A DNA stretch of 64,000 nt from Zygnema circumcarinatum SAG 698-1b (taxonomy: Eukaryota > Plantae > Zygnematophyceae). The position numbers were made by a program, and so were the translations under genes. Positions 840-64,000 of the stretch are shown piece after piece (positions within the stretch are counted from its first letter, which is position 1; each line of letters starts with the position of its first letter). The DNA lies in NCBI GenBank assembly GCA_037447605.1, contig CM074811.1, positions 2,232,001-2,296,000 on the forward strand. The letters are read 5' to 3'. A model generated the notes under the pieces. It was given only the letters and a program-made list of their open reading frames with translations. It was not told the origin of the DNA and made no database searches.

Positions 840-2280
840 AACGAGGTATGAAGAAAGAAAGAGGGAGAGAAAGAGAGGGAGGAGGAGAGAGAGAGGCTAT
901 TGTAGATATTCATCGGAGAGCGGGGGAAGTGAGAGGGTCGCTGCTTACAGCGGGAAATTTTGACAGTGGGTGGAACGTGGTTTTAACCAATCCTGAAGGC
1001 CGTCACAAAAAGGTGCCGAAAGGGGTGTCTCGGTAAATAGGGTTTTTTCCTTATCATCATAAATGGCATAATAATAGCTCCAAAAGTAGCTGTAAGTGAC
1101 GCCCATACATATCGGTGAATCTTGTACGTGACTGGCTGAGGGGTGGATGTACAGTTCAATGCTGGCAGCCGAAACCTAAATACTTTTGAGAGGCATATCT
1201 GAAAGGATTGTGTATACTGGGGGGGGGCTCGAAGTAGCGTTGGGAGGGAGAGATTCAGGTTAGATATGCAGACTCTGCTTCCATTCGACTCGACAGGCTC
1301 ACAAAAGTTCGTGAGTCTTAGTGATGAGGCGGAGAAAGTATATATTCTCTTCAAATTGGTTAGGACTATATAGAACGCATTAGCAAGTTTATTTCTTGGT
1401 AGGAATTTTAGAACACTGCAGTGACTGGTTTTCTCTCTCCTTTCCGGTTCCCTTTTGCCGGGGAAGTGGGAGCTGGGGATCGGCTGTGGGTAGTTACGAA
1501 GGCTGGCTGCTCTCTTGCCTTTGAAGGAGGGAGGAGGTTGAGACAGCGCTTCATGTGATGGCTCCTCATGCCACCATGGATAGTACATGTCACAAGTAAG
1601 GTAGCCGTGACATGAAGCAGCAGAACTACTCTTTCTTTTTTCAAAGAAATGTTTTTGCAATTCTCAGTGTGTGGTGGATATGGTGCCTGGACTGCTTGTA
1701 CTGTAAGAGCTGGAAAGAGAGAAAAAGAGGAAGAAACAGACTGAGAGAGACTATTGGGAGTGGGTAATGGATGTGAAGTTTGGTGCTTGTGCTGCATGAG
1801 AGCCTCTGTTTGCAGTCCGCTAAAGAGGTCGCATTGTCCGCATACATCCAAGAATGAAGATTCGACCTGAGGCGGAGGGCCCCCTGTCTTGTCTTTCAAT
1901 TAGGGCTGGACAGAGAGACAGACGCACACCGCAGACATTATTCATGGGTCGTGCGCACACCGAAGCCGGAGCATCCAGGCAGGCCCTGGCGCTGGGCGTA
2001 TGGCTGCCCGAGTTTATGTGTGGTCGTGAAAACAAGTACAACAATAAGAAGAAGAAGCAGAAGAAGCTTCTTCAGAATTACAAGAGGAAGGGCGAATGGT
2101 GTGCATTAGTCAGAAAGGCGAAGAGAAGTGCCCCCTTTTGGCTACACTTTAGTGACTTGTAACCAGTGATTACAGCAATGCGTGTATGCATGCATGCATG
2201 TCAAGTCTAACATGGCATCCACAATTGGCAATGTCAAATTTGGAATGTCGAGGCCCTAGGCCCTAGACGCCCGAGCCGGC

Positions 2281-2950
2281 ACTGGATCGTACGGACAGTC
2301 CTGCACGCGAGCGACCACTCAGAGAGGGCCACGCGCTGCCTCGGTCTCGCCGCTGCCGTACGGCCGCAAATCCGCGTACGGACGTCGACTCCGGCCGTAC
2401 GGCCTGGCTAGGCGCCACGCGGCAGGCGGTCCTTCGGGAGGACGCGCCGTCTGGCGGCGCCGCGGCACCGACAGTCAGTCGGGCGCACACAGGATTAGAG
2501 CCGAAATTAAAATACGTACGGCAATCCAATTTTTCCAAGGAAGACTATATATGCAATAAAATATCGCAATTCCAACCTCTGAACGGAGATCGATTTGTAG
2601 TTACAATTCACAGCATTACAACTACATCGAAAGGCGCAGCTACAGTTACAGTTACTGTGCAGGTTCATTCTCACGGTCCACAAAGAAAGGGCCCTGCCCG
2701 GCCCGGCCCGGGCTGGGCGGCGGAGCGGGTCCCGTCCGCGCTGCAGGCTGTTGGAGGTCGCGGGTGTGGGGGGGTGGATGGCGGAGGAGGCCTGCCGGCC
2801 ATGGCGGGCATGCGATAACAGGGCCGGCATTCGCGGCTTGCATCCTCACCGCGTCTCCCTTCTTGCCCGTTCTTGCGGGCCCGGAGGCTCGTGAGATATT
2901 TTCTTCTGCTGTTTTGCGTGCTTGCTGCTCCCACAGGCGGTCCATTCTCG
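2281..2950. promoter_or_regulatory. GC-rich upstream island of the golgin-like gene with five CGTACG palindromes
   Basis: CGTACG at 2288, 2357, 2375, 2396 and 2515; perfect 12-bp palindrome GGCCGTACGGCC at 2393-2404; lies directly 5' of the ATG at 2957. Confidence 0.5.
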
Positions 2951-2956
2951 TTCAAC

Positions 2957-5900
2957 ATGTGGCGTACACTCGGCACCTTGAAGGAGGGGCTGCAGGAGTT
3001 CAGCCGGGACGCGCTGCGGGAGACAAACCTCCTCCGGCCCGCTGCGACCACGGAGACGGAGAGAGCAATACCTGCAGAGAGAGAGAGAGAGAATAGCGCG
3101 GGAGAGAGCAAGGTGAGGTTGCAGGTTCAGGGCAAGAATGGATCTTTCTCACATGGAGTGAGATATTATCAGTTGATTGGAAGTAAGGAGATGACTGTTG
3201 TCATGTTAGGTTTGCGATTGGTAAGGGACCGTGGCGTTGAGCTAGATGGCGGGGCAGGCTTAGAATGCAATGTCGCTTAGTGGCATCTCATGTGTGCCGC
3301 TAGCCGTGGCGGGTGCAGGCAGGAGCTCGGCGGCTCGCGTCGTCACGGGCTGGTCGCTCCCCTGCAAGATCAAATGCAGAAGTTGCTAGAGAACCCTCTT
3401 CATTTTCACTGGACGAACATGATGAATGGGAAGGACAAAAGAATGCAGGCTCACCTGCTGTTGACGGAGACAGCGGCGGCTGGGAGAATCTCAACATTGA
3501 TACTCCCCTCAGCCCTCTTGCGGATCAGTCGTCTAGTATGGCCGCCTTCACTTCTCCAAAAGTGCAATCGTTGGGAGCTGCCGAGGCTGCTGTTGATACA
3601 AGCTATGACGACGGATTGATGGGACCAATTGATCTATTGGAAAGGCAGGATCGGTCCCAAGACGCAGGCAGTGAAGCTCATGCGATCACGGGGAATGACA
3701 CAGGCGGCCAAGTTGCAGATAGCCCAATGCTCTCAGAAAGCCAGGATGGTTCAAAGCCAGCCTCAAAAATGTCGCCTGCAGGTGAGAAAGTTGGTCAAAA
3801 TCGAGAGTCGTCCGAGTCAGAAAAAGTTGCAGGGGAGCGGCGGCATGAAGATATCGCAACTTCAGGCAATGTTCAGGCACAATCACCACCACTGGTTGAA
3901 CCGACCAGTGAGGGAGGTGCGGTTACAATCTCTGAAGGAGTTGCTCCCCCTAAAGCTTCTGTGAAGGCAGATGCCGTTAAGGAGGCGAGGCTGCAGGCCA
4001 AAAAGGACCGAGCAGAGCTTGAGAGGTTATCAAATCTATGCGCATATTTACGGAGTTCCTTAGAGGAGGAGCTGGTTGAACGGACGAAACTGAAGGAGGA
4101 GCTTGTCAAGTACAGAAATCAGGTCTGTACTGCCAATTAACAGGGTTTTTTTTTTTTTTTTTTTTTGTGAGCAGTAGAAAAGTACCGGTCAACTTTTATA
4201 CGGCTCAATGATGAGTTGTATTGAAGGCTCGAATCCTGTGAAAGGATGTCTGAAATCAAAGCATTTTTTTGGTGGTTGGGATAGAGATTGCATCTCTTCT
4301 TGCTCGGTAAGCTCTGCGTGTACTCTGAGAGCCCTGCCAAACCACTCAGTTCGTTATTGACTTTTTGTCCGGAACTGGTTGGCCTGGGCTTGCACTGACA
4401 TCACTAGAATTGCACTTTATCAGCGAAGCTTGCTCAAGCAACTCTGACAACATGCATCGCGCATCAAAGTCATGTGCCGATTTGCTTATTTGGTAACGAG
4501 GGATCTTTTATAACTGGAACACTGGAGGTATAGATACAAAGATTTTGAGTTAACTTCAAATAATCCAAATGCTGGTGTATTATTGGTAACTGCCCAAGTT
4601 TCAGGTGGCGCGAAACTAAGGTCGCTTATGATATGAATAGCGAAATTCTACGGTACTATATTTCCATGTTTAGAGAATGAATAGTAAGTATGAAATTTAT
4701 TGCCTACAAGGAGTTGTAGAATGTAGTGTAATAGCCATCAAAATCTATGAGGCAACGGGCAACGGGTTCAGGCTTTCGTTTTCGGTATTGTTTTAGAATA
4801 GTATGAAATTTCTTATGGTTAAACCTGGGAGAGAACTCTGCCAGTTATCTGTGCTGCCTTAAGCTGCCACTAATTGGAGGCAAGAGTATAAGAAGTCCCG
4901 TATAGTAAGGCGGTGCCCGCAATGTCAAATGATTCGTCTCATTTATCTAACAATTTTTCTTAATGTTGACAAGATCATCTAAATCAGGTCTATGCACCGC
5001 AGATTCAGCGCACCCGATATCCTAAAAAACCCGATCCTTCTGTCTCACTTCCTGCCAGTGATTGCCCAAAGGCTGTTCCAAAATAGCTTTGGTTTTGCTA
5101 TACAATACATGATTTTGTGCTCAACTTAGTGAATGAACAACCAGAGAAGGGTAGTCTTTCGTGGAAGTGTCTTGTTTAACACTACCAGCATTGGTCTTGT
5201 TTGCGAAGTCAGCGACAGACAAGGATGACCCTTTTTCAGAACGAGTCTGACTCCATTGGTGAGGGGGTACTGGATAGCACTGCAGAAGAGAGCACTGGAG
5301 GCACAAGTGGAGGAATTGGAGTCTGCAGCCGTAGACGCTGCAAAGATGGCGGAGGAGGAGCTGCAAGCAGCACAGAATGACTATCAGAAGCTGCAAGATA
5401 GGGCTATGGCTGCAGAAGCTAAAGCTGCTGCTTCTCGGAAGGAGAGAGAGGTCAGTTGCGACGAGAGAAGGCCACCTTTGAGTCAGCAAGTCTTGTAGTT
5501 GATTGAATGAGTTTGGTGACACGTGATGATGCGTTAATCTGATTGGGAAGGTTTTGCATGCTTGGGGAGTCGGGCAGGCTTTGGAGGCAAAAGTGAAGGC
5601 AATAACAGCTTCTTTAGAGAAACGGATGACAAATCTACAATCCGAGCTGCAGGTGAGTTTGGCAGGCAAATGTTTGAAGAGGAAAGGTCTTTTATGTCTC
5701 TGGTGATCTCTTCGCTGCTCTTTCAGCATTATTTTCAGCTTGAGTTTACATTTGTCCAGCCGCATAGCCGTTTCGTTGAGTTTCGTTTTGAGTCTTGCAG
5801 GCACGGCAGAAGGAGGTTGAGAGATTGCAAGAAGATAATGCGACAATGGAGTCGTCATTTTCTGAGTTGAGAAATCTGTTGAAGGAGGCTGTAGACGAGA

Positions 5901-42369: not shown

Positions 42370-45300
42370 TTACCCAGCCTGGCCGGATGACGTTGAAGAT
42401 GTTTCAAGGGACCTGTGGTATGACAGGGATCGAGTCAGCCCACGTCCCCATGCTGAAGGGATAGCTTTCGCTCCTGCTGACCAGCTCATATTTCTGGCCA
42501 AAGGACTGGTAGTTGATGCCATCATAGCCGGGACACGTGAACCGGCCACTGTGGGAAATTCTGTCGTAGTGACTTCGGCAGCAGCAGCTATTCCTGCATC
42601 TGCTGAAGGGTCGCTTCTCCTCCACTGCAATCTGCCAACAGGACTTCCCTTCACCGTAGTGGCAGCTGAAGGGAAGGAATTGATGCCACCTCGAAGGAAG
42701 GAATTCCTGCCAGCGCGAGGAGGAGCAGTCGGTCGTCGGATAGGGCCCCTCCATGGAGCGGCTCCAAGTAGCTCTGCAGGAGTTGTAGGTTTGCGGACGA
42801 CCTGCACGGACGCAACAGGGGAGGCACATTTTCACTAACCTGAAAATGATAAAGTGAACTGCCCAAATGCACGTTTTGAAAACAGACATTCTGACAACAA
42901 GCAGAACGGAGATATTACAGACATCGAAAGACTGCAAAGGACCAAGGGTAACCCTACTTCAACAAAGGTTACCTGTGACTTTCTGCATCCAGAACCATAT
43001 ACGAATGCTATATACAGGTGTATATGTACACGTATGTATATAAGTCGACTAGAAGCTCAATCATACACAACTGGAATCTGGAGGGTTCAAATGCAGTGGG
43101 TGCTACAACAGAATTAGCCATGCACCCTCGTGGAGAATTCCATGAAAGCATGACAAACACTAAACTCTTCATAAAGACTGGCACCAATTCCAACCCCCCT
43201 GAACTGAGCACTCAGTAGTCTATGAAGGGAAGGAGTACCTTCAATAAGCGAGAAAGAAATGATGACTCATTCAGCTCCAATGCCTTTGTGACGGCAGCTT
43301 CTGAAGCGAATTCAATGTAGGCACAGCTGCAAGCGGAGGCGAAAATGTCAGTCAGAAGGTACACATGTAATTTCTCCTTCAACAAATCTCCTACAGTAGT
43401 CCATAGGCATCCGCATCAAGTCCAAAGCCCGCTCTGCTTTTTAAACCCAAAACAAATCGTTGCTCTTGATTTCAACTTCGTATATATTACGAACAATGTT
43501 TGGTGAATTAATTTTAGGAGGTTACCAAATTAAGAAATCTCTGCGACGGTACAGCAAGGGAGATGAGACTGGAAGTGAGAGTACTTGCACACGAGGTCTC
43601 TTGTACTAAGTGCAGAAAACTCACCCTCTTGGAAGACCGGAAGTGGGGTCTGTCAAAATGGTCACTCGAACCACTTCCCCACATGCACCAAAATGAGCAG
43701 TGAGTCCGGCCACAGTAGCAGCAAAGTGTACCTGCATCAACGTGGCGATTGACTGTGAGAAAATTTACTAGTGATAAGAGAAGGAGCTACGCATACTACC
43801 TCAAGAAAAGGATCTCGCTAATATGTCAGCCAAAAATGGAGATGACATAGGGCTTGGCACTTTACCAGCATCCCGCTGTGCTACTCTCTATCCTCAACAT
43901 GTATTTACAGCAAAACAAAGGAGCCGTATAGTCATGAAGTCACCTCTAGTGGACAAGTACGCTGCTAACAACATTAAAATACTCATTGATGTATTTTCTC
44001 AGTTTTAGATCAGTATCAAGTCCGAGAACTTAAGTGTTAGTGAGAACTATTCGAAATGAGATGCTGCAAAATGCCTTGATTGGAGATGTCCCTCATTCCT
44101 TTTAGACACTTACATTGCTTACAAAAATGGACCGGGCGTTGATGTCCTCTTCAGAAGGAGGAAAATCAAATACCTTCAAACCTGCGGCAGGGGAGGTCAG
44201 AAAGCAGATCAAGTCAGAGATTTCAACCAACTCCAAAAGCCATCAATCTTACCTGCTATTAGGAGGAGATTAGACATCCACGCTTATCAAATAGTCAGTC
44301 CCTCTGATACGACAAGATGATGATCCCAGCGAACAAAACAAAGGCTGACTCCCTGCCCAGATTCACAATTTCAGATTCCTTTTGTCTCTTGGACAACAAT
44401 TACAATAGCTTATTTTGGGCTTGAAGTCCAACCTGGCAGAGGTGCGGTCCGGTTAAGATTGACGACTTCTGCTTGGCGAGCTCTCAACTTTGTCATCTCC
44501 AACTGCACTTGCCTCATGCGTCGCTTCATCTGATCCACATCCTCCAAAGCCTGAAACACCAAAAGGCCCCAAATACATTTGAGCACAGTTCTAATATATG
44601 TGAGCAGATTTCACCCCTTCAATATCAGTATAGTGAAGACATCTGCATCAAGTGGAGCTCGCCAGTTATGTGCGACCACAGTTCCATATCAGCAGGCTGT
44701 ATACGTCCCCATATGGTAGAGCGGATACCTTTCAATATGTCACTTTTAAGTAACTCAGTGTGCAGGAGGCATCAGTGAAGGACTCACATGAATATGACGA
44801 AAATATGCTCATAGTTATGGCATGCGTGATTGATGCATGACAGCAGCACACTAAAACCTATTAACCATTCTCGCTGACATTGTTTTGTAAGCAAATAATC
44901 TGGCATTTTTTGTTGAATCACCAGTCAAACTCTTTGCAAACTGGAGCAGAGAGTTTGGCCCTTATCCAGCTTGCGGACTCACCAAGCCACCTTCAGCAGC
45001 CACCTCCTGTGAGGTATTTTCCTCCATCGCTTCGTCATCTTCAGTTTCTCCTTCCTCCATCACGACACGAAGAGAAGCGTCTGCTGGCCCAAACTGGTCT
45101 GTCAAAGTAGCCTGTCCTGATGTTACCCTATGCCAAGACGACGAGCCTCTATTATCCCCTTGTGCAGCTCCAAAACCGGTGGCTATACCTAATCTCGATG
45201 CTTGATCTTCTACATCTACAGGCCCCACTCCATATGCCCCCTGTGAGTCAAATTCATGAACCCGAGGCCCCAATCTACTTCTTAAATTTCGTGGCGGAGG

Positions 45301-48300
45301 AGGAACTTCTACTCTGAAACTCTCTTCTCCTTCCCAAGTCAGCCCAGCTTGAGTTTCTTCTGCTTGTGCATCCTGGGCTTGTCCAATATGCTCATCTTCA
45401 TGCATACGGCCATTTCCATTCCACTCTTCGGGATCGCTAACATGACCCCTGAATAGAAAGCCCTGTTGGGGTTCTGACCCCCTTGTATAATCTCCTCTAC
45501 CCCTGGATTTCTCAGAAAGTTGTACAGAGCTATCAATTTGAGGCAACACCATCGATGATGTCCTTCCCGGGCCATGATCGACATAACCATTTGTTCTTCC
45601 TAACCTTCCCATTAACCTTGAACGCCTTTTACTACCATTCACTTCACCACTAGAAACGTTCCCTGTTGCCAGTACACTCTGATCATCTGCACCAATCCTG
45701 CCAGCTACATCAGGGCCTGACCCATGCTGATCTTCCCCTCTCGTCTCCAAGGGCTCTTTCACACTTTTTTTTCCATTTTCTCTGGTGGTTATAGATGTTG
45801 AGCCAAGCCGACCCCACACACTGCTAGGTTGCCCATCGTCTGCTCCCTCTTCGTGCAGAGGAACTTCAGAAGTCGTACCTTCCACTTCCATACCACTAGA
45901 ATCTGCCAAAAAGAAGTGCACGTGTACACTTTGTATTCTTAATACAAAACACAATAGAGTCTCGCAAAGGTGAGACAAGCTATGCTTGAACGATAAGAAC
46001 GATAAGAATCGCTAGCTAAATGAATTGCTTACACCTATGTTCGCTGCGAATGCTGCCAAGCAATGATACCAAAGAGTTGCCCTTTGCCCATTGAAGAAAA
46101 CAGCTCAAAATTTCTACTGATTGAACAAGCTAGCCAATCACATCAGAGACTCCTAGGTTACTCGTCACTACTAAATGAAGCCACAGATTAAACGAGGGCA
46201 TGCAACTCACCCTGCATGAAGGACATAAGACATTGACAGCCAACCGCATTGGATATCCAGGCCACTGGCAATGAGGTCTCGACAACACATCAGAAAACAA
46301 TCAATCATACAAGTTCCTTATGTTGCCCGGACAAAGGTCACTACCGAATAGTGAAAGGCAAACCTCTGACAAGACATTTACCTGCATTAGGTGCGACTAT
46401 TGAACGTAAGCGTTTGGCCGACGGAAGACCTGAAGCTGGTCCAACAGCATCTCTGACAGCGAACTGGAGAAGCCGAGCAGATGGATTCATCCGCACAACA
46501 GGAGGACCAGTGACCTGTCCCTCACAAAAAGTTCAAATGTGATCCTCAATTGTCTGCTAAACAGCTCAGTGGACATGTTACATGAAAACAAACAACTAAT
46601 CAAGCAAACCTGCAAATGCAGTAGTCCCTTGAGTACATTCGCCACGATCAATAAACAACATGACTCTCCCAAGATCATAATTTTAACTACCGACTATCAA
46701 CTGGCTGACAGGCTCATTATGCTATTTACGTACAAGTAGAATCACAACCAACGAACTATCTAATTACTATGAACCCAAACCAGAGTTTTAGCCAGTTTAA
46801 AGTGAACTGCAGTCATGTGCATACCCTGGATGGTACAGAGTCCCCGTAACGAAGATCATGTTCTGTCTTGGAATGGGTCGAGTCACTCTGCCGCCCACGC
46901 TTCAGCTTGGAGTGTCTGTCCCGCCCAAGAGACTCAAGCCCCTCTCGCATGCCACCTTCAATATGGTCCTCAGAACCATGATGTGACGTGATCCGCTCTC
47001 GATGCCGCTGCTCTTCATCAATAACTGACCTGGGAATTGGAGCCTGCTCTTCCGCATTCATTTTCTCATCCTCGTCTACTCTTACATCACCTACTCGAGA
47101 CCCTATTGAGTCCCTTCCACCAGGTGCCAACTTCTCCCCTTGCAACGTCCTAGAATGAGTTCCTGTTTCATTTTTCACTCCTATCCTCTTCCATGCGCCC
47201 TTTCCATTTCTGCGCTCCATCGATTGACCTTCAGGCGCTTCTCGACGGTCTGTATCTCTCGAAGCGGGAGGACGATAGAAGCGATCAACCCACTGATACT
47301 GATTCCTCCCACTTCTATCGTCCCCTTCATCCAGTCTTCGAGCATCTGCTGTTGGAGGAGAACGTTCAGCAAGCTTCCTAGTTTCTAAGTTACGATTATG
47401 ATGACGCCCATCTTGGACATGATCATGCTCGCTTCGCATGGGCATTTCAGATTCTCTAGCTCTTGATGTGTCAGGCTCATGCCTGCTCCGCCAGTGTCGC
47501 TCTCCCTTCTGGACACTTTCCGCTTCAACCCTCTCAGACCCTCGCCTCTCACTTGGTGAATCATATCGACCCCCGGCTTTGGACAAAAATCGGCCAAAAC
47601 CATCTTCCTCTCTAAGCCTGCGACCTTTGTTTCCTTCCGGTGTATGGTTCCTTCCATCATCTTTGTAGGCTAGGTCTGGTCTACTTCTAGTACCAGCAAT
47701 ATCCTCGTCAAAGTTCCCTCTGTTTAGTTCTTCCTTATGTTGTCTGAGATTCCAGTCTCTTTCAACCTCTGCAGACGTGTTCTTTAAAGGAGATGCGGAT
47801 GTTTGAAGGTGGCCATCCACCTGCAATTAATTGAAGAAAATAACCGTGTACTAAGATCCTCATGAAAGCCAACCATGTAAACACCCATGAAACCCTCATG
47901 CAACATACAAAAAAGGGTAATTGCAAATGAAACCTCACCTCCAGTGATTCGCCCTTGACATGTGCTCCAGGTTGGCTCCCCTCTTCATTCTCGGCTTCGG
48001 CAAACGGAAATGCCACATTAGAATCATTTTCTTGAGGCTCCTCAACAGCAGGCTTGGATACGTATAGGTGCTTATTTGCAGTCAAATGGTCCCAAAGCCT
48101 GCGAAGAATACATAGCGTCGGTATTGGCCAGTTCATGCATATGGACACAAACTGCAGAGCACAAGCCGACGCACTAGCAACTAACTGCAAAGAGACTCAT
48201 GCTCTATAATAGCAAGAGAGACTGCAGCGAGCCTGCCTGGTTGGGTTCCTTGTCAGAGTAATAGCACAGACTCCTGCAACAGTTAGACCACAAGCACAAT

Positions 48301-53587: not shown

Positions 53588-56500
53588 TCACAAATCTACT
53601 TCCCCGCACACATTGTCAATGCTGGCTGGTCTGAGCTCGGACTCTAAACTGCAAAAAGTTCGCCTCCAGAGCTTCACCGCTTTGGTGCGATCATTCGCCA
53701 TCCAATCAGAAATGTCGCCCCAAGGAGTGGCTCTCAAGTCAAAGGTCAATATCTTCCACTGCGGAAAAAACTTCATGAGCCCCTCCTTGAACCACATATC
53801 CACTCCATACGAACTGGGGATCCGGTGCTCCGAGGACTGTGCAAACCAATCGTAATAATAAGCGTTCAAGTATCGGTCCAGGGAGCCATGAGGGTACTTA
53901 AGCACTGCCAGCTTCGCCACCAGGTCCTTGAAAACCTCCTTGTTGGGCTGGATGACCATCACTCGGGAGGAGAACATGTCAGGCGGGAATACACTCGGAA
54001 TGGCTGCAAAGGACTCGTACCGCAATAGGTCGTTGCAGTTGTCAGTGAAGAGAGAGAGGGGGTGCACATACACAAGCTTGTCAAAGCCTGCCTGCTGATT
54101 CCAGACGTGCAAAACTGAGAACTCGGGAGGGAGTTTCCGCTTGCCCACAACTATGGGGTCCACAATGCGAACATAATTGAATAAACGAATGAAGGGATCC
54201 CATGCCTCGCGGTTCAGTGTCGAAAGCACGAGAAGCATAGTTTTCCGCCAAGAGTTGAATGAATGGTGCTGCTGATACGAGGTCGCCCACACGGCAGCTG
54301 CCTGCGGATGGTCCTCCCAAAGCACTGTTACGAAGGCTTCACTGCTGCCTGTAGCACGTGGTGGGATGAGCTGCACATGTGGCACGTTTGAGTTGGCTAT
54401 TGCGCCGAGTGGAACAGGACCCATTGTTGCTTCTGGATAGGTTTCATATGCCTTTGCATTCGGAAGCATCTTGACAATGGAGACATTTCCTTCGTCAAGT
54501 GGTCTCCATGAGTTGGCTGCCAACGCCTGTGACAACTTCAGCCATATATCACACCAGATGAGTTCACTGCTGTTGGAGGTGAGTCTCCAGGGCTTGTGCC
54601 ACGGACCTGCAAAGTGTACAACTGCCAGAGGACCATAGGCCTCATATATTTTGTTCATGTCATACCATTCCGGGGGGTGGTAATGAGGAGGAAAAAGGAA
54701 TACCGCATTATAGCGGGCTGGAAGACGGTGAGCAGGCGGCATCTCAAACCAGCCGCTGTAGTAGGAATTCAAGAAGCCCTGGTCTCCTTTATTGTACGAT
54801 GGGAGTAGGTCCAGCTTGGAAAGCATGTCTGCATGGGTAGCCTGCACACGTACAGCTAGTGAAGCTAAGAGCCATGCAGCACCGGATGGAAAGAATGGAG
54901 CAGGTATATGAGAACGAGATAGGAAACCTCCCCCTTGTGAAATGTTTGTAAAGTATCGGAGAAACAACGTCACAAGTGGGCCACACAGGAAGTGTGAATT
55001 GAAGCAAAGGATTTCCATGCAAAGATGAGTTTCATGGGATGCAAGTTACAAGGGCACTATCAGGATCAGCACTTGGTAGAAGGGTGTGGCCAACCGAGGC
55101 TCCCTCTATAAGCTGAATGCGCATATTGAGAGTGACTCAGATTTTGCAAGGGAAACATAAAGCTCCATCGCTCTCCAAAACCCCTGAGCTCTGTGAGGAA
55201 GTAAGTACCTTGGACGGTTTAAGGACAAGCAGACCGCTGTTAAACTTCCCGGACATGTAAACGTCTGGTACTGCTGATGGCTCCGGGTGAGCAAATAAAT
55301 GATCGAGGTTCGCCAGAATCATTGTATCAACATCAATGTAGACCACTTTCGCATAATCCAAGAGTAGCCATGCATTGAGCTTGTTGAAACCCTTCACTCT
55401 GTACTTATTCTTTACACTCTTCACCTTCAGAACCTTGTCGAAGTGCGCCAGTAGAATGGGGTCCTTCAGATTCAAATTACTCGTGTCATCAATCATGAGG
55501 ACGAAGTCATGCACAGTGCCCGTATTTCTTAGGGACTGCGACAAAACCAACGCAGCCGGAATGTAATCCGCTGAGCCGATGAGAGTTGTGTATGCGAACC
55601 GGCTTTCCGTGACCACGATGTTTTGCCCCACTGCTCGACGTGCCAGCAGTTTTGAACCAGCTCTCTTGTCACAATGAACAATGACTCCAAATTTATCGCA
55701 GAAAACCTGCTCAGAGACGTCGGTTGTCGCTTTGCTGCGACTGTACCGCAGCTCCATGCCTCCCCACAGCTTAACAAAAGAAGCAATGCAAGCACCTCGA
55801 TCTTTTCGATGTCCTGCTCGAGCACTCAGACCAATGGCGCTTAGCTCGTCGTCCGAATTACGAGTATCGCCCCAGTCTCTGGGCGACCCCTCCACCAACT
55901 GAGGCCCAACTCCCGTCTCTGACGACACAAGAAAGTTCATTGCTATGTCTTCACAATTCATCCCCTTGTCAACAAATTCCTTCACTCCAGGCGGCGCACG
56001 GCAAGTGTAGTGAAAGAGATAATTGGTATGCAAAAGCATGAGCTTGGTCAGCATGATGGAGTACCGCTCAGGCAGCTTTGTGTACATCCATGACTTTGTA
56101 TCAAGATTGTAAATATGAGCCCTCGGGAAAAACCCAACGATCCGGTGCTGATTCTCTTGCCAAACCTTGAGTGCAAAATACAATGATTTCTCGTCCGCTG
56201 TAATGTCGTCGTCGCATATTGCAACAACTTTTGTGCGGATAAAGCTTCTTGGAAGGAAGCGGTCATTCAAACTATTGGTTTTCTGTCTCACTACTTGGAC
56301 GGGAGCTCCTGCACTCGCCCACTGTTCTCCATTACCTACAAGCTCCTCAGGAGTACTGACATTTCCCCATAACACGTAGATGGCATCTACAACCAAACTC
56401 TGAGAATATGTAAACATGTTACGCTTCAGAAGCGCGATCCTCGCTTCTGAATAGCCATTAACTAAAATAGTAATGCGATCTTCCAGGAGCATATCTGTAG

Positions 56501-56726
56501 CAGGATACATCCTGCGGTCGCAGATGCTTGCATCTCCCAAGTGCTCCGCTGCATATGTGTCTGCTACTTCTGCCAGTGTAGCAGCCGGCGCAGAGACCAA
56601 AAGGCCTCTTAGTAAAAAAAGGAACAGTAATCCGAGAGCCACAAAACCACATTGCAGAGGATATCGCAAAACCCTAACTCCCGCGGTGTGCAGAGCGTGG
56701 GATGACCTGCTGGACATGAGACCCAT
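53588..56726 (-). CDS. Type II membrane glycosyltransferase fusion: GT64 + GT8 + degenerate GT8 (~923 aa)
   Basis: Two exons, 56726-55209 and 54841-53588 (phase 0). Signal anchor FVALGLLFLFLLRGLLV; GT64 motifs NSLNDRF, CDDD, RIVGFFPR, YSIMLTK, NCEDIAMNF; GT8 motifs AYTTL, VYIDVDT, FNSG, DQGFLN, HFAGPWHKPW; then a second GT8-like copy. Confidence 0.9.
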
Positions 56727-57026
56727 GGCTGAATGGGAGAGAATGATCAATAGCTATGGCGATATAAATGCAGACATGTTTTCTCTTTTGGCGAGACTGA
56801 AACGAATAGAGGGAGGCTGCGCCCTCCTGCCAGAGGGCGCGCATCTCATGGGGCGGACCCTCGCCCAGAGGCCGCCATGGCTGTGCCTGCCTCCGACTTC
56901 GAATGGCCTCCTATGACGACAGGAATGGGAGTCGGCGGGGGAACACTGTACGGACAGACGATACATGAAGCCGCTGTTCCGTTGCCTGTTGTTGTTGAAC
57001 GGAACTGGCAAAGGACGGGCTTCGAT

Positions 57027-57066
57027 TCCCTCTCTCTCTCTCTCTCTCTCGCCTCTCTCTCTCGCT
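57027..57066. repeat. (CT)n microsatellite upstream of the glycosyltransferase gene
   Basis: Read directly. Confidence 0.85.
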
Positions 57067-58860
57067 CCTCTTATTTATTTCGAGCCACAAACACTTGCAC
57101 TTAACATATGGTTAGCATGGCTTCCAGACGAGCTGCAACTTCGACTTTACAAGGGTAGTGCTCTCATTGTAGAGTACTTCTGGAGTCTCAACATTGAGCT
57201 TCTAATAGACAATTTTCAACATTCTTTACTATTTGACTTTCGACTCGGAAATCAAATGCAAGTGTAGCTACTGTTTGAATATTAAACGGTCACGTTGCCA
57301 ATGCTCTAACCATGTTTTAAGCTGAGAGTGTGGAAGTACTGCGTCAGACTCTTGACAAATTCAAGAGAGCTATTCCAGTCCACTCAAAACCAGGGAGGCA
57401 GTAGCGGTGCTATAAAATTGGACATGGTGCCATGCCCATGCATGGTCCACAACTCCAAGGCGCCCTATGTACCAGCCCTCGTCACATCATGTAAATAGGA
57501 GTGCGGTTGTTCCTAAAGAGGCGGAACCCCCCACTGCCCACCAAGTGAGTGCTCCAATATTAAGCATTGAACTCTTGCGAATTCTGCGGATAAGCCTCTA
57601 GCTCAAGCAAGCGACGAACCCCTGCAACGAGGCACATTGCCACTGTTGGCCACAACTCAAGGACCTGCCCCAGCAAAGGGGGTCTGAAGGGGGTGCATTG
57701 CAGAAACTGACAGTTTTCACTAGCGACTGCTGGAAGCTCAGCTTGGCATTGGCCTTTGAGATTGAGACAAGGGAGCAAAGGGCTTCTCCATGATCTGTTC
57801 AAGGAGCCATTGTTATCGTCACATGTTTCATGTAATCTAGATTCCAATAACTAGAGGAAACAAAAGCAAGCTAAGAAATATCCGTCTTCACTCTCGTAGT
57901 TGACCTTTCACGAGCTGTAAGCTTGTATTAATGGTCCTATTGGGGGGGTTCCAGAGTTAGAAATGTTTGACACTTTTGGAATGCGAATCAGTACACGCTT
58001 CCAACAATGAAATAAGTAATACAACGAAATAAGGAGCACTCGATGGAAACATGGAAATAAATTCCATGTTCAGCTTTTCAAGCCTGAAACCCCCTACTTC
58101 AGTAGTGCATGCAAGAACTGACTGTGGTTGAGGCTTTGTTTCTAACCCATCCATGCAAATACCAGGTTTGCAACACTGTCAGATCAAACGATTCAATCGC
58201 AGCACCCCGCCTACTTCAAGAATTCATACTTAGGAAAAAGACAGGGCCAAAGGTTGTGGCCGTACATCGCTCCCCCCCCACCCCCCCCAACCCGTAGCCG
58301 CTAAGCTGTGCATTTTTAAGGCATTTGAGGTTCTAGGTCATCTAATCGCCGCATATTGAGCAGAGGGTCTCCACAACCCGACCAATGACAAATTCTGTAT
58401 TCTGTAAAACTGAAAGTTGCTGTCAAACAAATCACAATACAAATGTGTCTATATCGTCCACCTGTGCAAAACCAAAAAACAGACGCATCCGCCCCTAAAC
58501 ACCCGCCTCCCCTGCTGCTCAGAACAAACTGCCATGTCAGCGCTGCAAACATTGGACGCACAGGCCGGAGAGGGAGAAAGTGAAGCAGGCTGCAATGGCT
58601 GCCGCCGCTTGGCTTCACTTCGCTGCAATCCCCTGTGCTCTGCAGGCCTGCCTGGCAGAGAGAAGAGAGAGCGAGTGATTGAATGCGAGAGAGAGAGAGA
58701 AAATATAAGGAATGGATAGAGAGAGGTGAATAGGTGGCCCTTCAGACAGGGCCCCCGTAGCAGCTGTTCAGCCCAGAAAGGCAGCTCAGAAAGGCGCTGT
58801 TGCAGCTTGGACTGCTGCCAGAAACGAGACGGATGTTGGGCTTCAAACAATGCCGGGCTC

Positions 58861-63399: not shown

Positions 63400-63456
<57 letters not shown>

Positions 63457-64000
63457 AAGAAAGACAGACAGAGAGGGACAGAGAGAGAGTGGTTTCCACC
63501 ATGTTCCACGTACCGTCTGTCAGTCTCACCTTCACCAAAAGAATAGAGAGCAATATGTGACTTACAGTTTTGTCACAGCGTGCAACGCCGGGCGTAGCTC
63601 AAGCTCTTCATCTAACTGAAAGGTATCCTCTGCTTCACTTCTATTGCCGGATGCATGAGCCTGTGATTGGGATGCAAAAGCAGCACTGAGTCCTCCTGTA
63701 TCTGCTGCAAGTCGTGACCCTTGCGGTCGCTTTACTGAGCCGCTGCGCCTCTTTAAGGAATTTCGCAGTGATGGGCCCTCTGTATCAGTTTCATCATCTG
63801 CCATAACCCCAATATCAATTTCTGTGTCCCGATGTGTTGTTTTATCTGTCCTATCAACACGCAACCGTGACGAAACCGGAGTCATTGGAGCCTCCTTCCA
63901 GCCCTCGTTCATGTCTCCAGCTTTCATGTCTGTGCCATCACAGGCAGCTTCCACCAGCTTAGGACCCTCCCGATCTGCTACCAAAATCTCTGAATTCATG
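58861..64000 (-). CDS. LARP1: La-related protein 1 (DM15/LARP1 domain); 5' part with La motif outside window
   Basis: [62 protein letters not shown] (exon 59559-59455), YGLEKYWAYHFYRK (last exon 59215-58861). Confidence 0.9.
60372..60386 (+). mobile_element. Solo terminal inverted repeat of the MITE family in a LARP1 intron
   Basis: TAGGGGGAGTCAGAC is identical to the TA plus first 13 nt of the MITE 2 left end; no matching right end found nearby. Confidence 0.5.
62444..62511. repeat. Intronic 26-bp direct duplication (period 42)
   Basis: CAGCACATCACATGCTGCTACAAGCA at 62444 and CAGCACATCACATCTTGCTACAAGCA at 62486. Confidence 0.8.
63405..63452. repeat. (GA)n microsatellite in LARP1 intron
   Basis: Read directly. 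Confidence 0.92.

What the first reader, a model, noticed from the sequence alone, without database searches (positions are those of the whole stretch)
53588..56726. GT64-GT8-GT8 glycosyltransferase fusion: a possible one-protein glycan assembly line
Seen: one reading frame joins a signal anchor, a complete GT64 domain (~56477-55665, CDDD intact) and a complete glycogenin/PGSIP-type GT8 domain (~55601-54590, DVD, DQGFLN and HxxGxxKPW intact). The GT64/GT8 junction lies inside exon 1, so it is not a splicing artefact. Known: in land plants these families are separate genes, and GIPC sphingolipid head groups are built by a GT8 (IPUT1/PGSIP6, adds GlcA) followed by a GT64 (GMT1/EPC1 or GINT1); animal GT64s pair with GT47 instead (EXT/EXTL). 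From memory, the GT64 tail (RDWGDTRN..GLS.R..HRKDRG.CI..F, EQ..C.K.G..V.CD) resembles the uncharacterised Arabidopsis At1g80290 clade. Inference: this is a Rosetta-stone fusion that couples consecutive sugar transfers and may point to the function of that orphan clade.
Basis: partly seen in the sequence, partly recalled or inferred. Interest (0 to 1): 0.85.

Follow-up and report, generated by a model that had tools for sequence, protein, structure and literature searches.

The report
Algal GT64–GT8–pseudoGT8 fusion glycosyltransferase
This alga makes one membrane-anchored protein that joins two intact sugar-adding enzyme domains to a third, inactive copy. It is the long ancestral form of an uncharacterised enzyme that all land plants still carry in shortened or decayed form, so it offers a way to find out what that enzyme does.

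Summary
A two-exon gene on the minus strand (56726..55209 and 54841..53588, with a 367-nt GT..AG intron) encodes a 923-aa type II membrane protein. It has a signal anchor, an intact GT64 domain, an intact glycogenin-type GT8 domain, and a second GT8 domain that lacks every catalytic motif.

The GT64/GT8 junction lies inside exon 1. An intron-free RNA-seq-derived contig from a close relative carries the same uninterrupted reading frame.

The architecture is not unique. It occurs in Chara, Zygnematophyceae, liverworts, mosses, a lycophyte and a haptophyte. In land plants the first GT8 domain has lost its DxD, GDQG and H..KPW motifs. Ferns, Selaginella and seed plants keep only the GT64 part, the 'GT64 C3' proteins, which end at the fusion junction.

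The GT8 domain is not IPUT1, GUX or glycogenin. It sits in its own well-supported clade of tandem GT8 proteins.

A separate fusion in the reverse order (GT8–GT64) exists in fungi, a red alga and Zygnematophyceae, which strengthens the case that the two families work together.

The most likely function is a Golgi enzyme that adds two successive alpha-linked sugars, with the dead GT8 copy as a built-in dimer partner. The substrate is unknown, and the GIPC idea is neither supported nor excluded. I found no paper on this fusion.

The parts
53588..56726 (-). Whole coding region: exon 1 56726..55209, intron 55208..54842, exon 2 54841..53588 (stop codon TGA at 53588..53590); 923 aa
   Evidence: collinear with the intron-free ortholog contig L001
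54842..55208 (-). 367-nt phase-0 intron (GTACTT...GTGCAG) that splits the first GT8 domain between KPSK and ATHADM
   Evidence: L001 runs on continuously: its bases 596-1873 match window 56485-55208 and its bases 1880-3078 match window 54834-53636
56589..56660 (-). Signal anchor (aa 23-46), the only hydrophobic segment, implying type II topology with all three domains in the lumen
   Evidence: hydropathy scan; the same N-terminal segment is found in P0002, P0004, P0006, P0007, P0083 and P0089
55725..56474 (-). GT64 domain (aa 85-334), with DDD at 56205..56213 and NCEDIAMNF at 55932..55958
   Evidence: Pfam PF09258 E 4e-65; PDB EXTL3/EXT2 GT64 domains E 1e-31; 47% identical to Ricinus 'GT64 C3', which ends at the junction
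55209..55616 (-). First GT8 domain, N-terminal part in exon 1 (aa 371-506), with DVD at 55326..55334
54545..54841 (-). First GT8 domain, C-terminal part in exon 2 (aa 507-605), with GDQGFLN at 54767..54787 and HFAGPWHKPW at 54587..54616
54356..54544 (-). Linker (aa 606-668), partly helical then disordered in the model of the ortholog
   Evidence: low pLDDT over residues 634-656 of P0002 and 275-305 of the fragment model
53681..54355 (-). Second GT8 domain (aa 669-893), a pseudo-glycosyltransferase: VHP (54059..54067) in place of DxD, LDRYLN in place of GDQGFLN, no His/Lys motif
   Evidence: PDB Gat1 E 2.8e-19; motif table; glycogenin fold in the model

Best explanation
The gene encodes a type II membrane protein of the secretory pathway, most likely in the Golgi. 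It carries two active retaining glycosyltransferase domains. The GT64 domain would add an alpha-linked HexNAc or hexose. The glycogenin-type GT8 domain would add an alpha-linked sugar from a UDP-sugar. Both would put successive sugars on the same glycan. The C-terminal GT8 copy is catalytically dead and probably packs against the active GT8 as an internal stand-in for the second subunit of the Gat1/glycogenin dimer, completing the acceptor groove. Land plants kept the GT64 activity while the GT8 catalytic residues decayed and the tail was later lost. The more economical order is therefore GT64 first, then GT8 extending its product. Shown here: the gene model, the domains, the motif states, the phylogenetic placement and the distribution. 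Inferred: activity of both domains, lumenal location, order of action, and the pseudo-dimer. Unknown: donor sugars and acceptor.
For: One reading frame, confirmed by an intron-free ortholog contig. A single N-terminal hydrophobic anchor. GT64 motifs are intact in every ortholog. In the first GT8 domain the metal-binding DxD and His, the GDQG sugar-binding motif and the phosphate-binding Lys are intact in the Zygnematophyceae examined (Spirogloea excepted), in Chara, and in the two GT8-GT8' proteins without GT64, P0086 and P0087; algal terminal branches are short at 0.07-0.26. The same domain is degenerate, with long branches of 0.8-1.2, in liverworts, mosses and a lycophyte, while their GT64 branches stay short at 0.05-0.33. 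The second GT8 lacks all catalytic motifs everywhere but is retained as one old lineage (98/92). The AlphaFold model of the GT8-GT8' fragment has pLDDT 85.8 and pTM 0.84 despite a 30-residue disordered linker, which indicates a fixed packing of the two domains. Each domain has the glycogenin fold, with TM about 0.8 normalised to the target. Gat1 and glycogenin are obligate dimers whose interface forms the acceptor groove (bioRxiv 10.1101/764241). GT8 and GT64 are also fused in the reverse order in fungi, Galdieria and Zygnematophyceae. Seed-plant GT64 C3 proteins end exactly at the junction.
Against: There is no biochemical data for any member of either fused clade, and no transcript from this genome itself. 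The closest solved GT8 structures (Gat1, glycogenin) are cytoplasmic enzymes. I could not inspect model coordinates, so the pseudo-dimer geometry was not compared with the real glycogenin dimer. Proteins with GT8-GT8' but no GT64 exist (P0086, P0087, P0095 to P0098), so the GT8 module can work without a fused GT64. Retention of a dead GT8 tail in bryophytes shows the tail also has a non-catalytic role, which could be its main role here too.
Confidence: 0.6

Rival explanations
1. GIPC head-group assembly line: the GT8 domain does the IPUT1 step (GlcA onto inositol phosphorylceramide) and the GT64 domain does the following GINT1/GMT1-type step.
For: From established knowledge, the two characterised plant GT64 enzymes (GINT1, GMT1) act on GIPC directly after a GT8 (IPUT1). 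The fusion pairs the same two CAZy families. All GT8 catalytic motifs, including GDQGFLN, are shared with IPUT1-type proteins such as P0232.
Against: The GT8 domain lies in a clade (100/99) separate from named IPUT1 orthologs (97/93 and 100/97). It lacks IPUT1's C-terminal membrane segments. IPUT1-type proteins scored below Gat1-like, glycogenin and GUX-type proteins in the exhaustive search; only one IPUT1-like protein reached the top 150, at E 5e-21. Land plants lost the fused GT8 activity yet keep the GT64, which is hard to reconcile with the GT8 making the GT64's acceptor.
Confidence: 0.15
2. Co-polymerase like EXT1/EXT2 (GT47-GT64) or LARGE (GT8-GT49): the two active domains alternate to build a repeating alpha-linked disaccharide polymer of the algal wall or mucilage.
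For: It has the same design as the known bifunctional polymerases, with two catalytic domains on one type II anchor. Foldseek also lists LARGE1 among weaker matches. GT8 activity was lost at the transition to land plants, as expected for an alga-specific polymer.
Against: No such polymer is known. The GT64 part survives alone in all vascular plants, so it has a function that needs no partner domain. Nothing in the sequence separates polymerisation from adding two sugars once.
Confidence: 0.12
3. Only the GT64 domain is catalytic. Both GT8 domains serve as carbohydrate-binding or scaffolding modules, as they must in bryophytes and lycophytes.
For: The tail is retained with dead motifs in land plants, and the second GT8 is dead everywhere. 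The two GT8 domains pack as one unit in the model.
Against: In the window and in the other algae examined apart from Spirogloea, every catalytic residue of the first GT8 is intact and its branches are short. That pattern is not expected for a purely structural module, given how quickly the motifs decayed in land plants.
Confidence: 0.1
4. Annotation artefact: two neighbouring genes read through as one.
For: No RNA data from this genome itself were available.
Against: GT64 and the first 136 residues of GT8 share one uninterrupted exon. A 3345-nt contig from run SRR8128903 and a complete Trinity ORF from EukProt carry the whole architecture without a break. The same arrangement appears in more than 15 species.
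Confidence: 0.02

Closest known systems
Plant 'glycosyltransferase family protein 64 C3' (uncharacterised GT64 clade C; At1g80290 in Arabidopsis, from memory)
   Same: The GT64 domain is 41-57% identical and shares the tail motifs. It forms one clade with the fused proteins (83/90, 33 rows). The stand-alone proteins end at the residue where the fusion continues.
   Different: The stand-alone proteins are about 320-350 aa and have no GT8 tail. The window protein has 923 aa with an intact GT8 and a pseudo-GT8. Neither has a known function.
EXT1/EXT2/EXTL3 heparan sulfate enzymes (GT47-GT64)
   Same: Type II Golgi proteins in which a GT64 domain is fused to a second glycosyltransferase domain. 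They are the best solved-structure matches for the GT64 part, at E 1e-31.
   Different: The partner domain is an inverting GT47 on the N-terminal side, not a retaining GT8 on the C-terminal side. They form an animal clade separate from the plant clade.
LARGE1/LARGE2 (GT8-GT49 matriglycan polymerase)
   Same: A GT8 domain fused to a second glycosyltransferase domain on one type II anchor; a weak structural match.
   Different: The GT8 subfamily and the partner family differ. LARGE has no pseudo-GT8 copy.
Gat1 (Skp1 alpha-galactosyltransferase, PDB 6mw5) and glycogenin
   Same: The closest solved relatives of both GT8 domains (E 1.6e-29 and 2.8e-19 for Gat1). They share the fold and are dimeric enzymes with the acceptor groove at the interface.
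   Different: Both are cytoplasmic, single-domain homodimers. Gat1's UDP-Gal determinant Thr180 (GDTG) is Gln here (GDQG). The window domain falls in a separate clade.
IPUT1 (GT8) followed by GINT1/GMT1 (GT64) in plant GIPC synthesis
   Same: The same two CAZy families acting in succession, both making alpha linkages (established knowledge).
   Different: These are separate genes. IPUT1 is a different GT8 clade and has C-terminal membrane segments. GINT1 and GMT1 could not be included in my GT64 tree.
Reverse-order GT8-GT64 proteins of Mucoromycota, chytrids, Galdieria, Closterium and Mesotaenium (uncharacterised)
   Same: The same two families in one protein, with the same PSYN.GDQGFLN.YF signature in the GT8 domain.
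   Different: The domain order is reversed and there is no second GT8. They form their own GT8 clade (100/99) and a different GT64 branch. They coexist with the window-type protein in Zygnematophyceae, so they are paralogous.

Membership tests
CAZy GT64 (Pfam PF09258) | Profile match above the curated cut-off | tested here: met
   219.9 bits against a cut-off of 21.3, E 4e-65
CAZy GT64 (Pfam PF09258) | DXD metal/nucleotide motif and the NCEDIAMNF motif shared with EXTL3 and EXT2 | tested here: met
   DDD aa 172-174 and NCEDIAMNF aa 257-265, conserved in all orthologs
CAZy GT64 (Pfam PF09258) | Retaining alpha-glycosyl transfer activity | not testable with these tools
   needs an enzyme assay
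Plant GT64 clade C ('GT64 C3', At1g80290-type) | Groups with named C3 proteins to the exclusion of other GT64s | tested here: met
   33-row clade of fused and C3 proteins, 83/90; animal EXT and reverse-order GT64s fall outside it; 47% identity to Ricinus C3 over 296 residues
Plant GT64 clade C ('GT64 C3', At1g80290-type) | Separate from the GINT1 and GMT1/EPC1 clades | not tested
Plant GT64 clade C ('GT64 C3', At1g80290-type) | The database name 'GT64 C3' corresponds to At1g80290 | not tested
   from memory only; the one paper holding 'At1g80290' is uninformative
CAZy GT8, glycogenin-like (Pfam PF01501) | Profile match above the cut-off | tested here: met
   met in the uninterrupted orthologs P0001 to P0004 (28.9-36.7 bits against a cut-off of 24.3); not reported on the window pieces because the intron splits the domain
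CAZy GT8, glycogenin-like (Pfam PF01501) | DxD, GDQG and His...Lys-Pro-Trp catalytic motifs | tested here: met
   first GT8 domain has DVD, GDQGFLN and HFAGPWHKPW; second GT8 domain has none of them
CAZy GT8, glycogenin-like (Pfam PF01501) | Glycogenin-type GT-A fold | tested here: met
   Foldseek E 1e-21, TM 0.8 normalised to glycogenin-1, using the model of ortholog P0002
IPUT1 / PGSIP6 | Falls inside the clade of named IPUT1 orthologs | tested here: not met
   IPUT1 clade 97/93 and 100/97; the window sits in a separate clade, 100/99
IPUT1 / PGSIP6 | N-terminal GT8 domain followed by several C-terminal membrane segments | tested here: not met
   the window has one N-terminal segment only; the IPUT1-like P0232 has four C-terminal ones
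GUX / PGSIP1-5 | Falls inside the GUX clade | tested here: not met
   the GUX clade, including a named Selaginella GUX1, is 100/100 and separate
Gat1 (Skp1 alpha-galactosyltransferase) | Cytoplasmic single-domain protein with the GDTG (Thr180) UDP-Gal determinant | tested here: not met
   signal anchor present; GDQG instead of GDTG
Bifunctional two-domain Golgi glycosyltransferases (EXT, LARGE type) | Two catalytic glycosyltransferase domains with intact motifs on one type II anchor | tested here: met
Bifunctional two-domain Golgi glycosyltransferases (EXT, LARGE type) | Alternating polymerase activity | not testable with these tools
   needs an enzyme assay

The most novel reading that the evidence does not exclude
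The protein is a co-polymerase in the manner of EXT1/EXT2 and LARGE. Its GT64 and GT8 domains would alternate to build a so far unknown alpha-linked repeating glycan of streptophyte algae. Land plants would have given up the polymer, with the GT8 decayed and then lost, and kept the GT64 half (At1g80290-type) for a single-sugar transfer.
Probability: 0.12. Interest if true: 0.85.

Novelty: new variant of a known kind. Interest (0 to 1): 0.6.

Why it matters
GT64 clade C is the one plant GT64 group for which I found no assigned function (PMC3342304; no later paper). This analysis shows that its ancestral form carried an active glycogenin-type GT8 and a pseudo-GT8. The GT8 activity decayed in bryophytes and lycophytes, and the tail was dropped in ferns, Selaginella and seed plants.

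This gives a concrete, testable lead: the orphan enzyme once worked in tandem with an alpha-glycosyltransferase on the same glycan. It also gives tractable material. The algal enzyme can be assayed as one soluble lumenal protein, and Marchantia and moss orthologs can be knocked out.

The fusion of the same two families in the reverse order in fungi, a red alga and algae suggests a general GT8/GT64 partnership across eukaryotes, of which the plant IPUT1 then GINT1/GMT1 steps may be one unfused example. The tandem active/dead GT8 pair is also a candidate case of a homodimeric enzyme turned into a single-chain pseudo-dimer.

Tried and rejected
- Pfam on the two window ORFs separately missed the GT8 domain, because the intron splits it. 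I used the uninterrupted orthologs instead.
- The word-index search with the GT8 region returned only orthologs and no IPUT1, GUX or glycogenin. The exhaustive representative search and a search seeded with an IPUT1-like hit were needed to get reference sequences.
- I tried to read the donor sugar from Gat1's UDP-Gal determinants (Thr180, Asp176, Ser233). The window has Gln, Asn and Ala at the aligned positions, so no donor can be inferred.
- I could not obtain GINT1 or GMT1 sequences, so the GT64 tree lacks the two characterised plant clades.
- The GINT1 paper (PMC6053017) is not held.
- Searches for At1g80290, GT64 with GT8, GT64 C3 names, the Pfam names, and GT64 with GT8 and Zygnematophyceae found nothing on this fusion.
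Only pTM is available as evidence.
- Neighbouring ORFs and earlier notes on this window show no glycan-related neighbour.
- A word search of earlier scan findings for GT64/GT8/IPUT1 returned nothing.
- The idea that the gene is two genes read through was rejected.
Full report
**Gene model**

The region holds two long minus-strand ORFs, 55137..56750 (537 aa) and 53588..55018 (476 aa). The first ends just after a consensus donor (AAG|GTACTTAC) and the second contains an acceptor (GTGCAG|GCT) in the same phase. Joining them gives exon 1 at 56726..55209, a 367-nt intron at 55208..54842, and exon 2 at 54841..53588. The product is a 923-aa protein that reads ...FNSGLLVLKPSK|ATHADMLSKLD... across the junction. 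All coordinates below were checked by back-translation.

An in-frame stop lies just upstream of the ATG. There is no RNA evidence from this genome.

The closest database relative, P0001 (83% identical), is encoded on a 3345-nt contig assembled from run SRR8128903. That contig aligns collinearly with both window exons and has no intron between them. Its bases 596-1873 match window 56485-55208 and its bases 1880-3078 match window 54834-53636. Its reading frame extends upstream to the same MGLMSS start. A complete Trinity ORF in EukProt (P0002, 918 aa, 78% identical) has the same layout. The fusion is therefore one transcript in close relatives, and the GT64/GT8 junction lies inside exon 1 in the window.

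**Domains**

- **Signal anchor.** A single hydrophobic segment at aa 23-46 is the only predicted membrane segment. This implies a type II protein with everything else in the lumen. Three N-x-S/T sites and 11 cysteines downstream of the anchor fit a secretory-pathway protein.
- **GT64 domain.** It matches Pfam PF09258 at E 4e-65 and the GT64 domains of EXTL3 and EXT2 at E 1e-31. DDD and NCEDIAMNF are intact.
- **First GT8 domain (aa 371-605).** It has DVD, FNSG, GDQGFLN and HFAGPWHKPW. Using the uninterrupted ortholog, it matches Pythium Gat1 (6mw5) at E 1.6e-29 and glycogenin-1 at about E 1e-22.
- **Second GT8 domain (aa 669-893).** It matches Gat1 at E 2.8e-19 and glycogenin at E 3e-9, but has VHP for DxD, LDRYLN for GDQGFLN, and no His/Lys motif.

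An AlphaFold model of the ortholog shows three folded domains (mean pLDDT 75.5, pTM 0.57). The GT8-GT8' fragment alone gives pLDDT 85.8 and pTM 0.84 despite a disordered 30-residue linker. Its domains match glycogenin with TM about 0.8, normalised to the target.

**Distribution**

The same GT64-GT8-GT8' order is found in:
- Mesotaenium, Closterium, Spirogloea and two Chara paralogs;
- Marchantia, where it is annotated 'glycogenin', and two Riccia species;
- Ceratodon and Diphasiastrum;
- the haptophyte Diacronema lutheri.

A motif table across 18 orthologs shows three states:
- GT64 motifs are intact everywhere.
- First-GT8 motifs are intact in the window, in its zygnematophyte relatives other than Spirogloea, in Chara, and in the two GT8-GT8' proteins without GT64 (P0086, P0087). 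They have decayed in liverworts (EID, RRQYLLN), mosses (DLN/DVN, VEHRPLN), the lycophyte (DVE, TADHFLN) and Spirogloea (DSG).
- Second-GT8 motifs are absent everywhere.

Ferns, Selaginella, gymnosperms and angiosperms have only stand-alone GT64 proteins of 320-350 aa, named 'glycosyltransferase family protein 64 C3'. A Ricinus example is 47% identical to the window GT64 and ends at ...LIFCDR, exactly where the window protein runs on into GT8.

**GT64 tree**

In a 60-row maximum-likelihood tree, the streptophyte fused proteins and the C3 proteins form one clade (83/90), with the fused proteins nested among the stand-alone ones. Animal EXT/EXTL proteins form a separate clade (97/89). The GT64 domains of reverse-order fusions lie elsewhere.

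Two limits apply: the link between the database name and At1g80290 is from memory, and no GINT1 or GMT1 sequences could be obtained for the tree.

**GT8 tree**

An exhaustive HMMER search with the GT8 domain found 33 proteins at E up to 1e-30. Most of these have two GT8 stretches. Below them is a continuum of small Gat1-like proteins, glycogenins and GUX-type proteins around E 1e-28 to 1e-21. One hit with C-terminal membrane segments (P0232) served as a seed and brought in many named IPUT1 orthologs.

- **79-row tree.** The window's first GT8 sits in a clade (100/99) made only of tandem GT8 proteins, with or without GT64. IPUT1 (97/93), GUX (100/100), glycogenin and the reverse-order fusions (100/99) are separate clades. 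The backbone is unresolved.
- **Tree with the second domains added.** The first domains form one clade (100/99) and the second domains fall on one side of a branch (98/92). The internal duplication is therefore old.

The GT8 domain is thus neither IPUT1 nor GUX nor glycogenin.

**A second fusion in the reverse order**

Proteins with GT8 first and GT64 second occur in Galdieria, chytrids (Rhizophlyctis, Irineochytrium), Mucoromycota (Mycotypha, Choanephora), Closterium and Mesotaenium. Their GT8 and GT64 domains each fall outside the window's clades, and Zygnematophyceae carry both types. They are therefore paralogous and most simply a second, independent fusion. One tree weakly joins the two GT8 clades (82/64), so a single old fusion followed by rearrangement is not excluded. 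Either way, the recurrent pairing is good evidence that glycogenin-type GT8 and GT64 enzymes cooperate.

**Mechanism**

I favour a Golgi enzyme that adds two successive alpha-linked sugars. Both catalytic domains have complete motifs that are conserved across these algae.

Land plants kept the GT64 under tight constraint (terminal branches 0.05-0.33) while their GT8 decayed (0.8-1.2). The GT64 step therefore probably does not depend on the fused GT8 step. The likelier order is GT64 first, with GT8 extending its product, and that extension was lost on land.

Gat1 and glycogenin are obligate dimers whose interface forms the acceptor groove (10.1101/764241). The conserved dead second GT8 and the confident two-domain model suggest a single-chain pseudo-dimer.

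The donor sugars cannot be read from the sequence. Gat1's UDP-Gal determinant Thr180 is Gln here, as in glycogenin, GUX and IPUT1.

**Literature and novelty**

Harholt et al. 2012 describe three plant GT64 clades, with B and C uncharacterised (PMC3342304). GINT1 and GMT1/EPC1 have been assigned to GIPC synthesis since (PMC11440917, PMC7980081). I found no paper on At1g80290's function or on any GT64/GT8 fusion. The held library lacks most subscription journals.

The predicted proteins are already in public databases as hypothetical proteins. The novelty therefore lies in the reading, not in the sequence: a new domain combination within the known class of bifunctional Golgi glycosyltransferases, and an evolutionary history for an orphan plant enzyme.

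**Verdict**

Interest is moderate to fairly high for plant glycobiology.

Noticed in passing
window 57030-57068 (minus strand, about 300 nt upstream of the ATG at 56726): A (GA)n tract of about 40 nt sits in the presumed promoter or 5' leader of the gene. A similar GA/CT repeat shows up as RERERE translations near 63400-63546.
   Followed up: no
L001:1-3345 (Logan SRR8128903): The gene call for the ortholog P0001 starts at an internal Met (MEDRITIL). The open frame continues upstream to MGLMSSRH with a hydrophobic anchor, so the database protein is N-terminally truncated by about 75 residues.
   Followed up: partly
P0086, P0087, P0095-P0098 (Zygnematophyceae and unnamed transcript or contig assemblies): Tandem GT8-pseudoGT8 proteins without any GT64 domain, some with their own N-terminal anchor. 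The GT8 pair therefore exists as a free-standing module alongside the fused form.
   Followed up: partly
P0105 (Catharanthus roseus, 1025 aa): A seed-plant protein with two GT8 stretches of equal strength (E about 1e-31 each) and no GT64. It was not placed in the trees and may be a tandem gene-model fusion or a distinct family.
   Followed up: no
P0109 (Logan, 1134 aa) and P0113 (EukProt Trinity, 1210 aa): Further arrangements of the same families: GT8, weak GT64, GT8 in P0109, and weak GT64, GT8, GT8 in P0113. Organisms are unknown.
   Followed up: no
window 44962-47826 (minus strand): Two long ORFs of 337-338 aa rich in Arg, Asp, Glu, Gly and Ser, looking like exons of a low-complexity, possibly RNA-binding or RS-like protein. 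Unrelated to the finding.
   Followed up: no
P0323, P0324, P0335, P0341 and similar (about 269 aa; one named from the myxobacterium Minicystis): Small, probably bacterial GT8 proteins group next to eukaryotic IPUT1 in both GT8 trees (89/15 and 90/81). This hints at a bacterial connection for the IPUT1 lineage.
   Followed up: no
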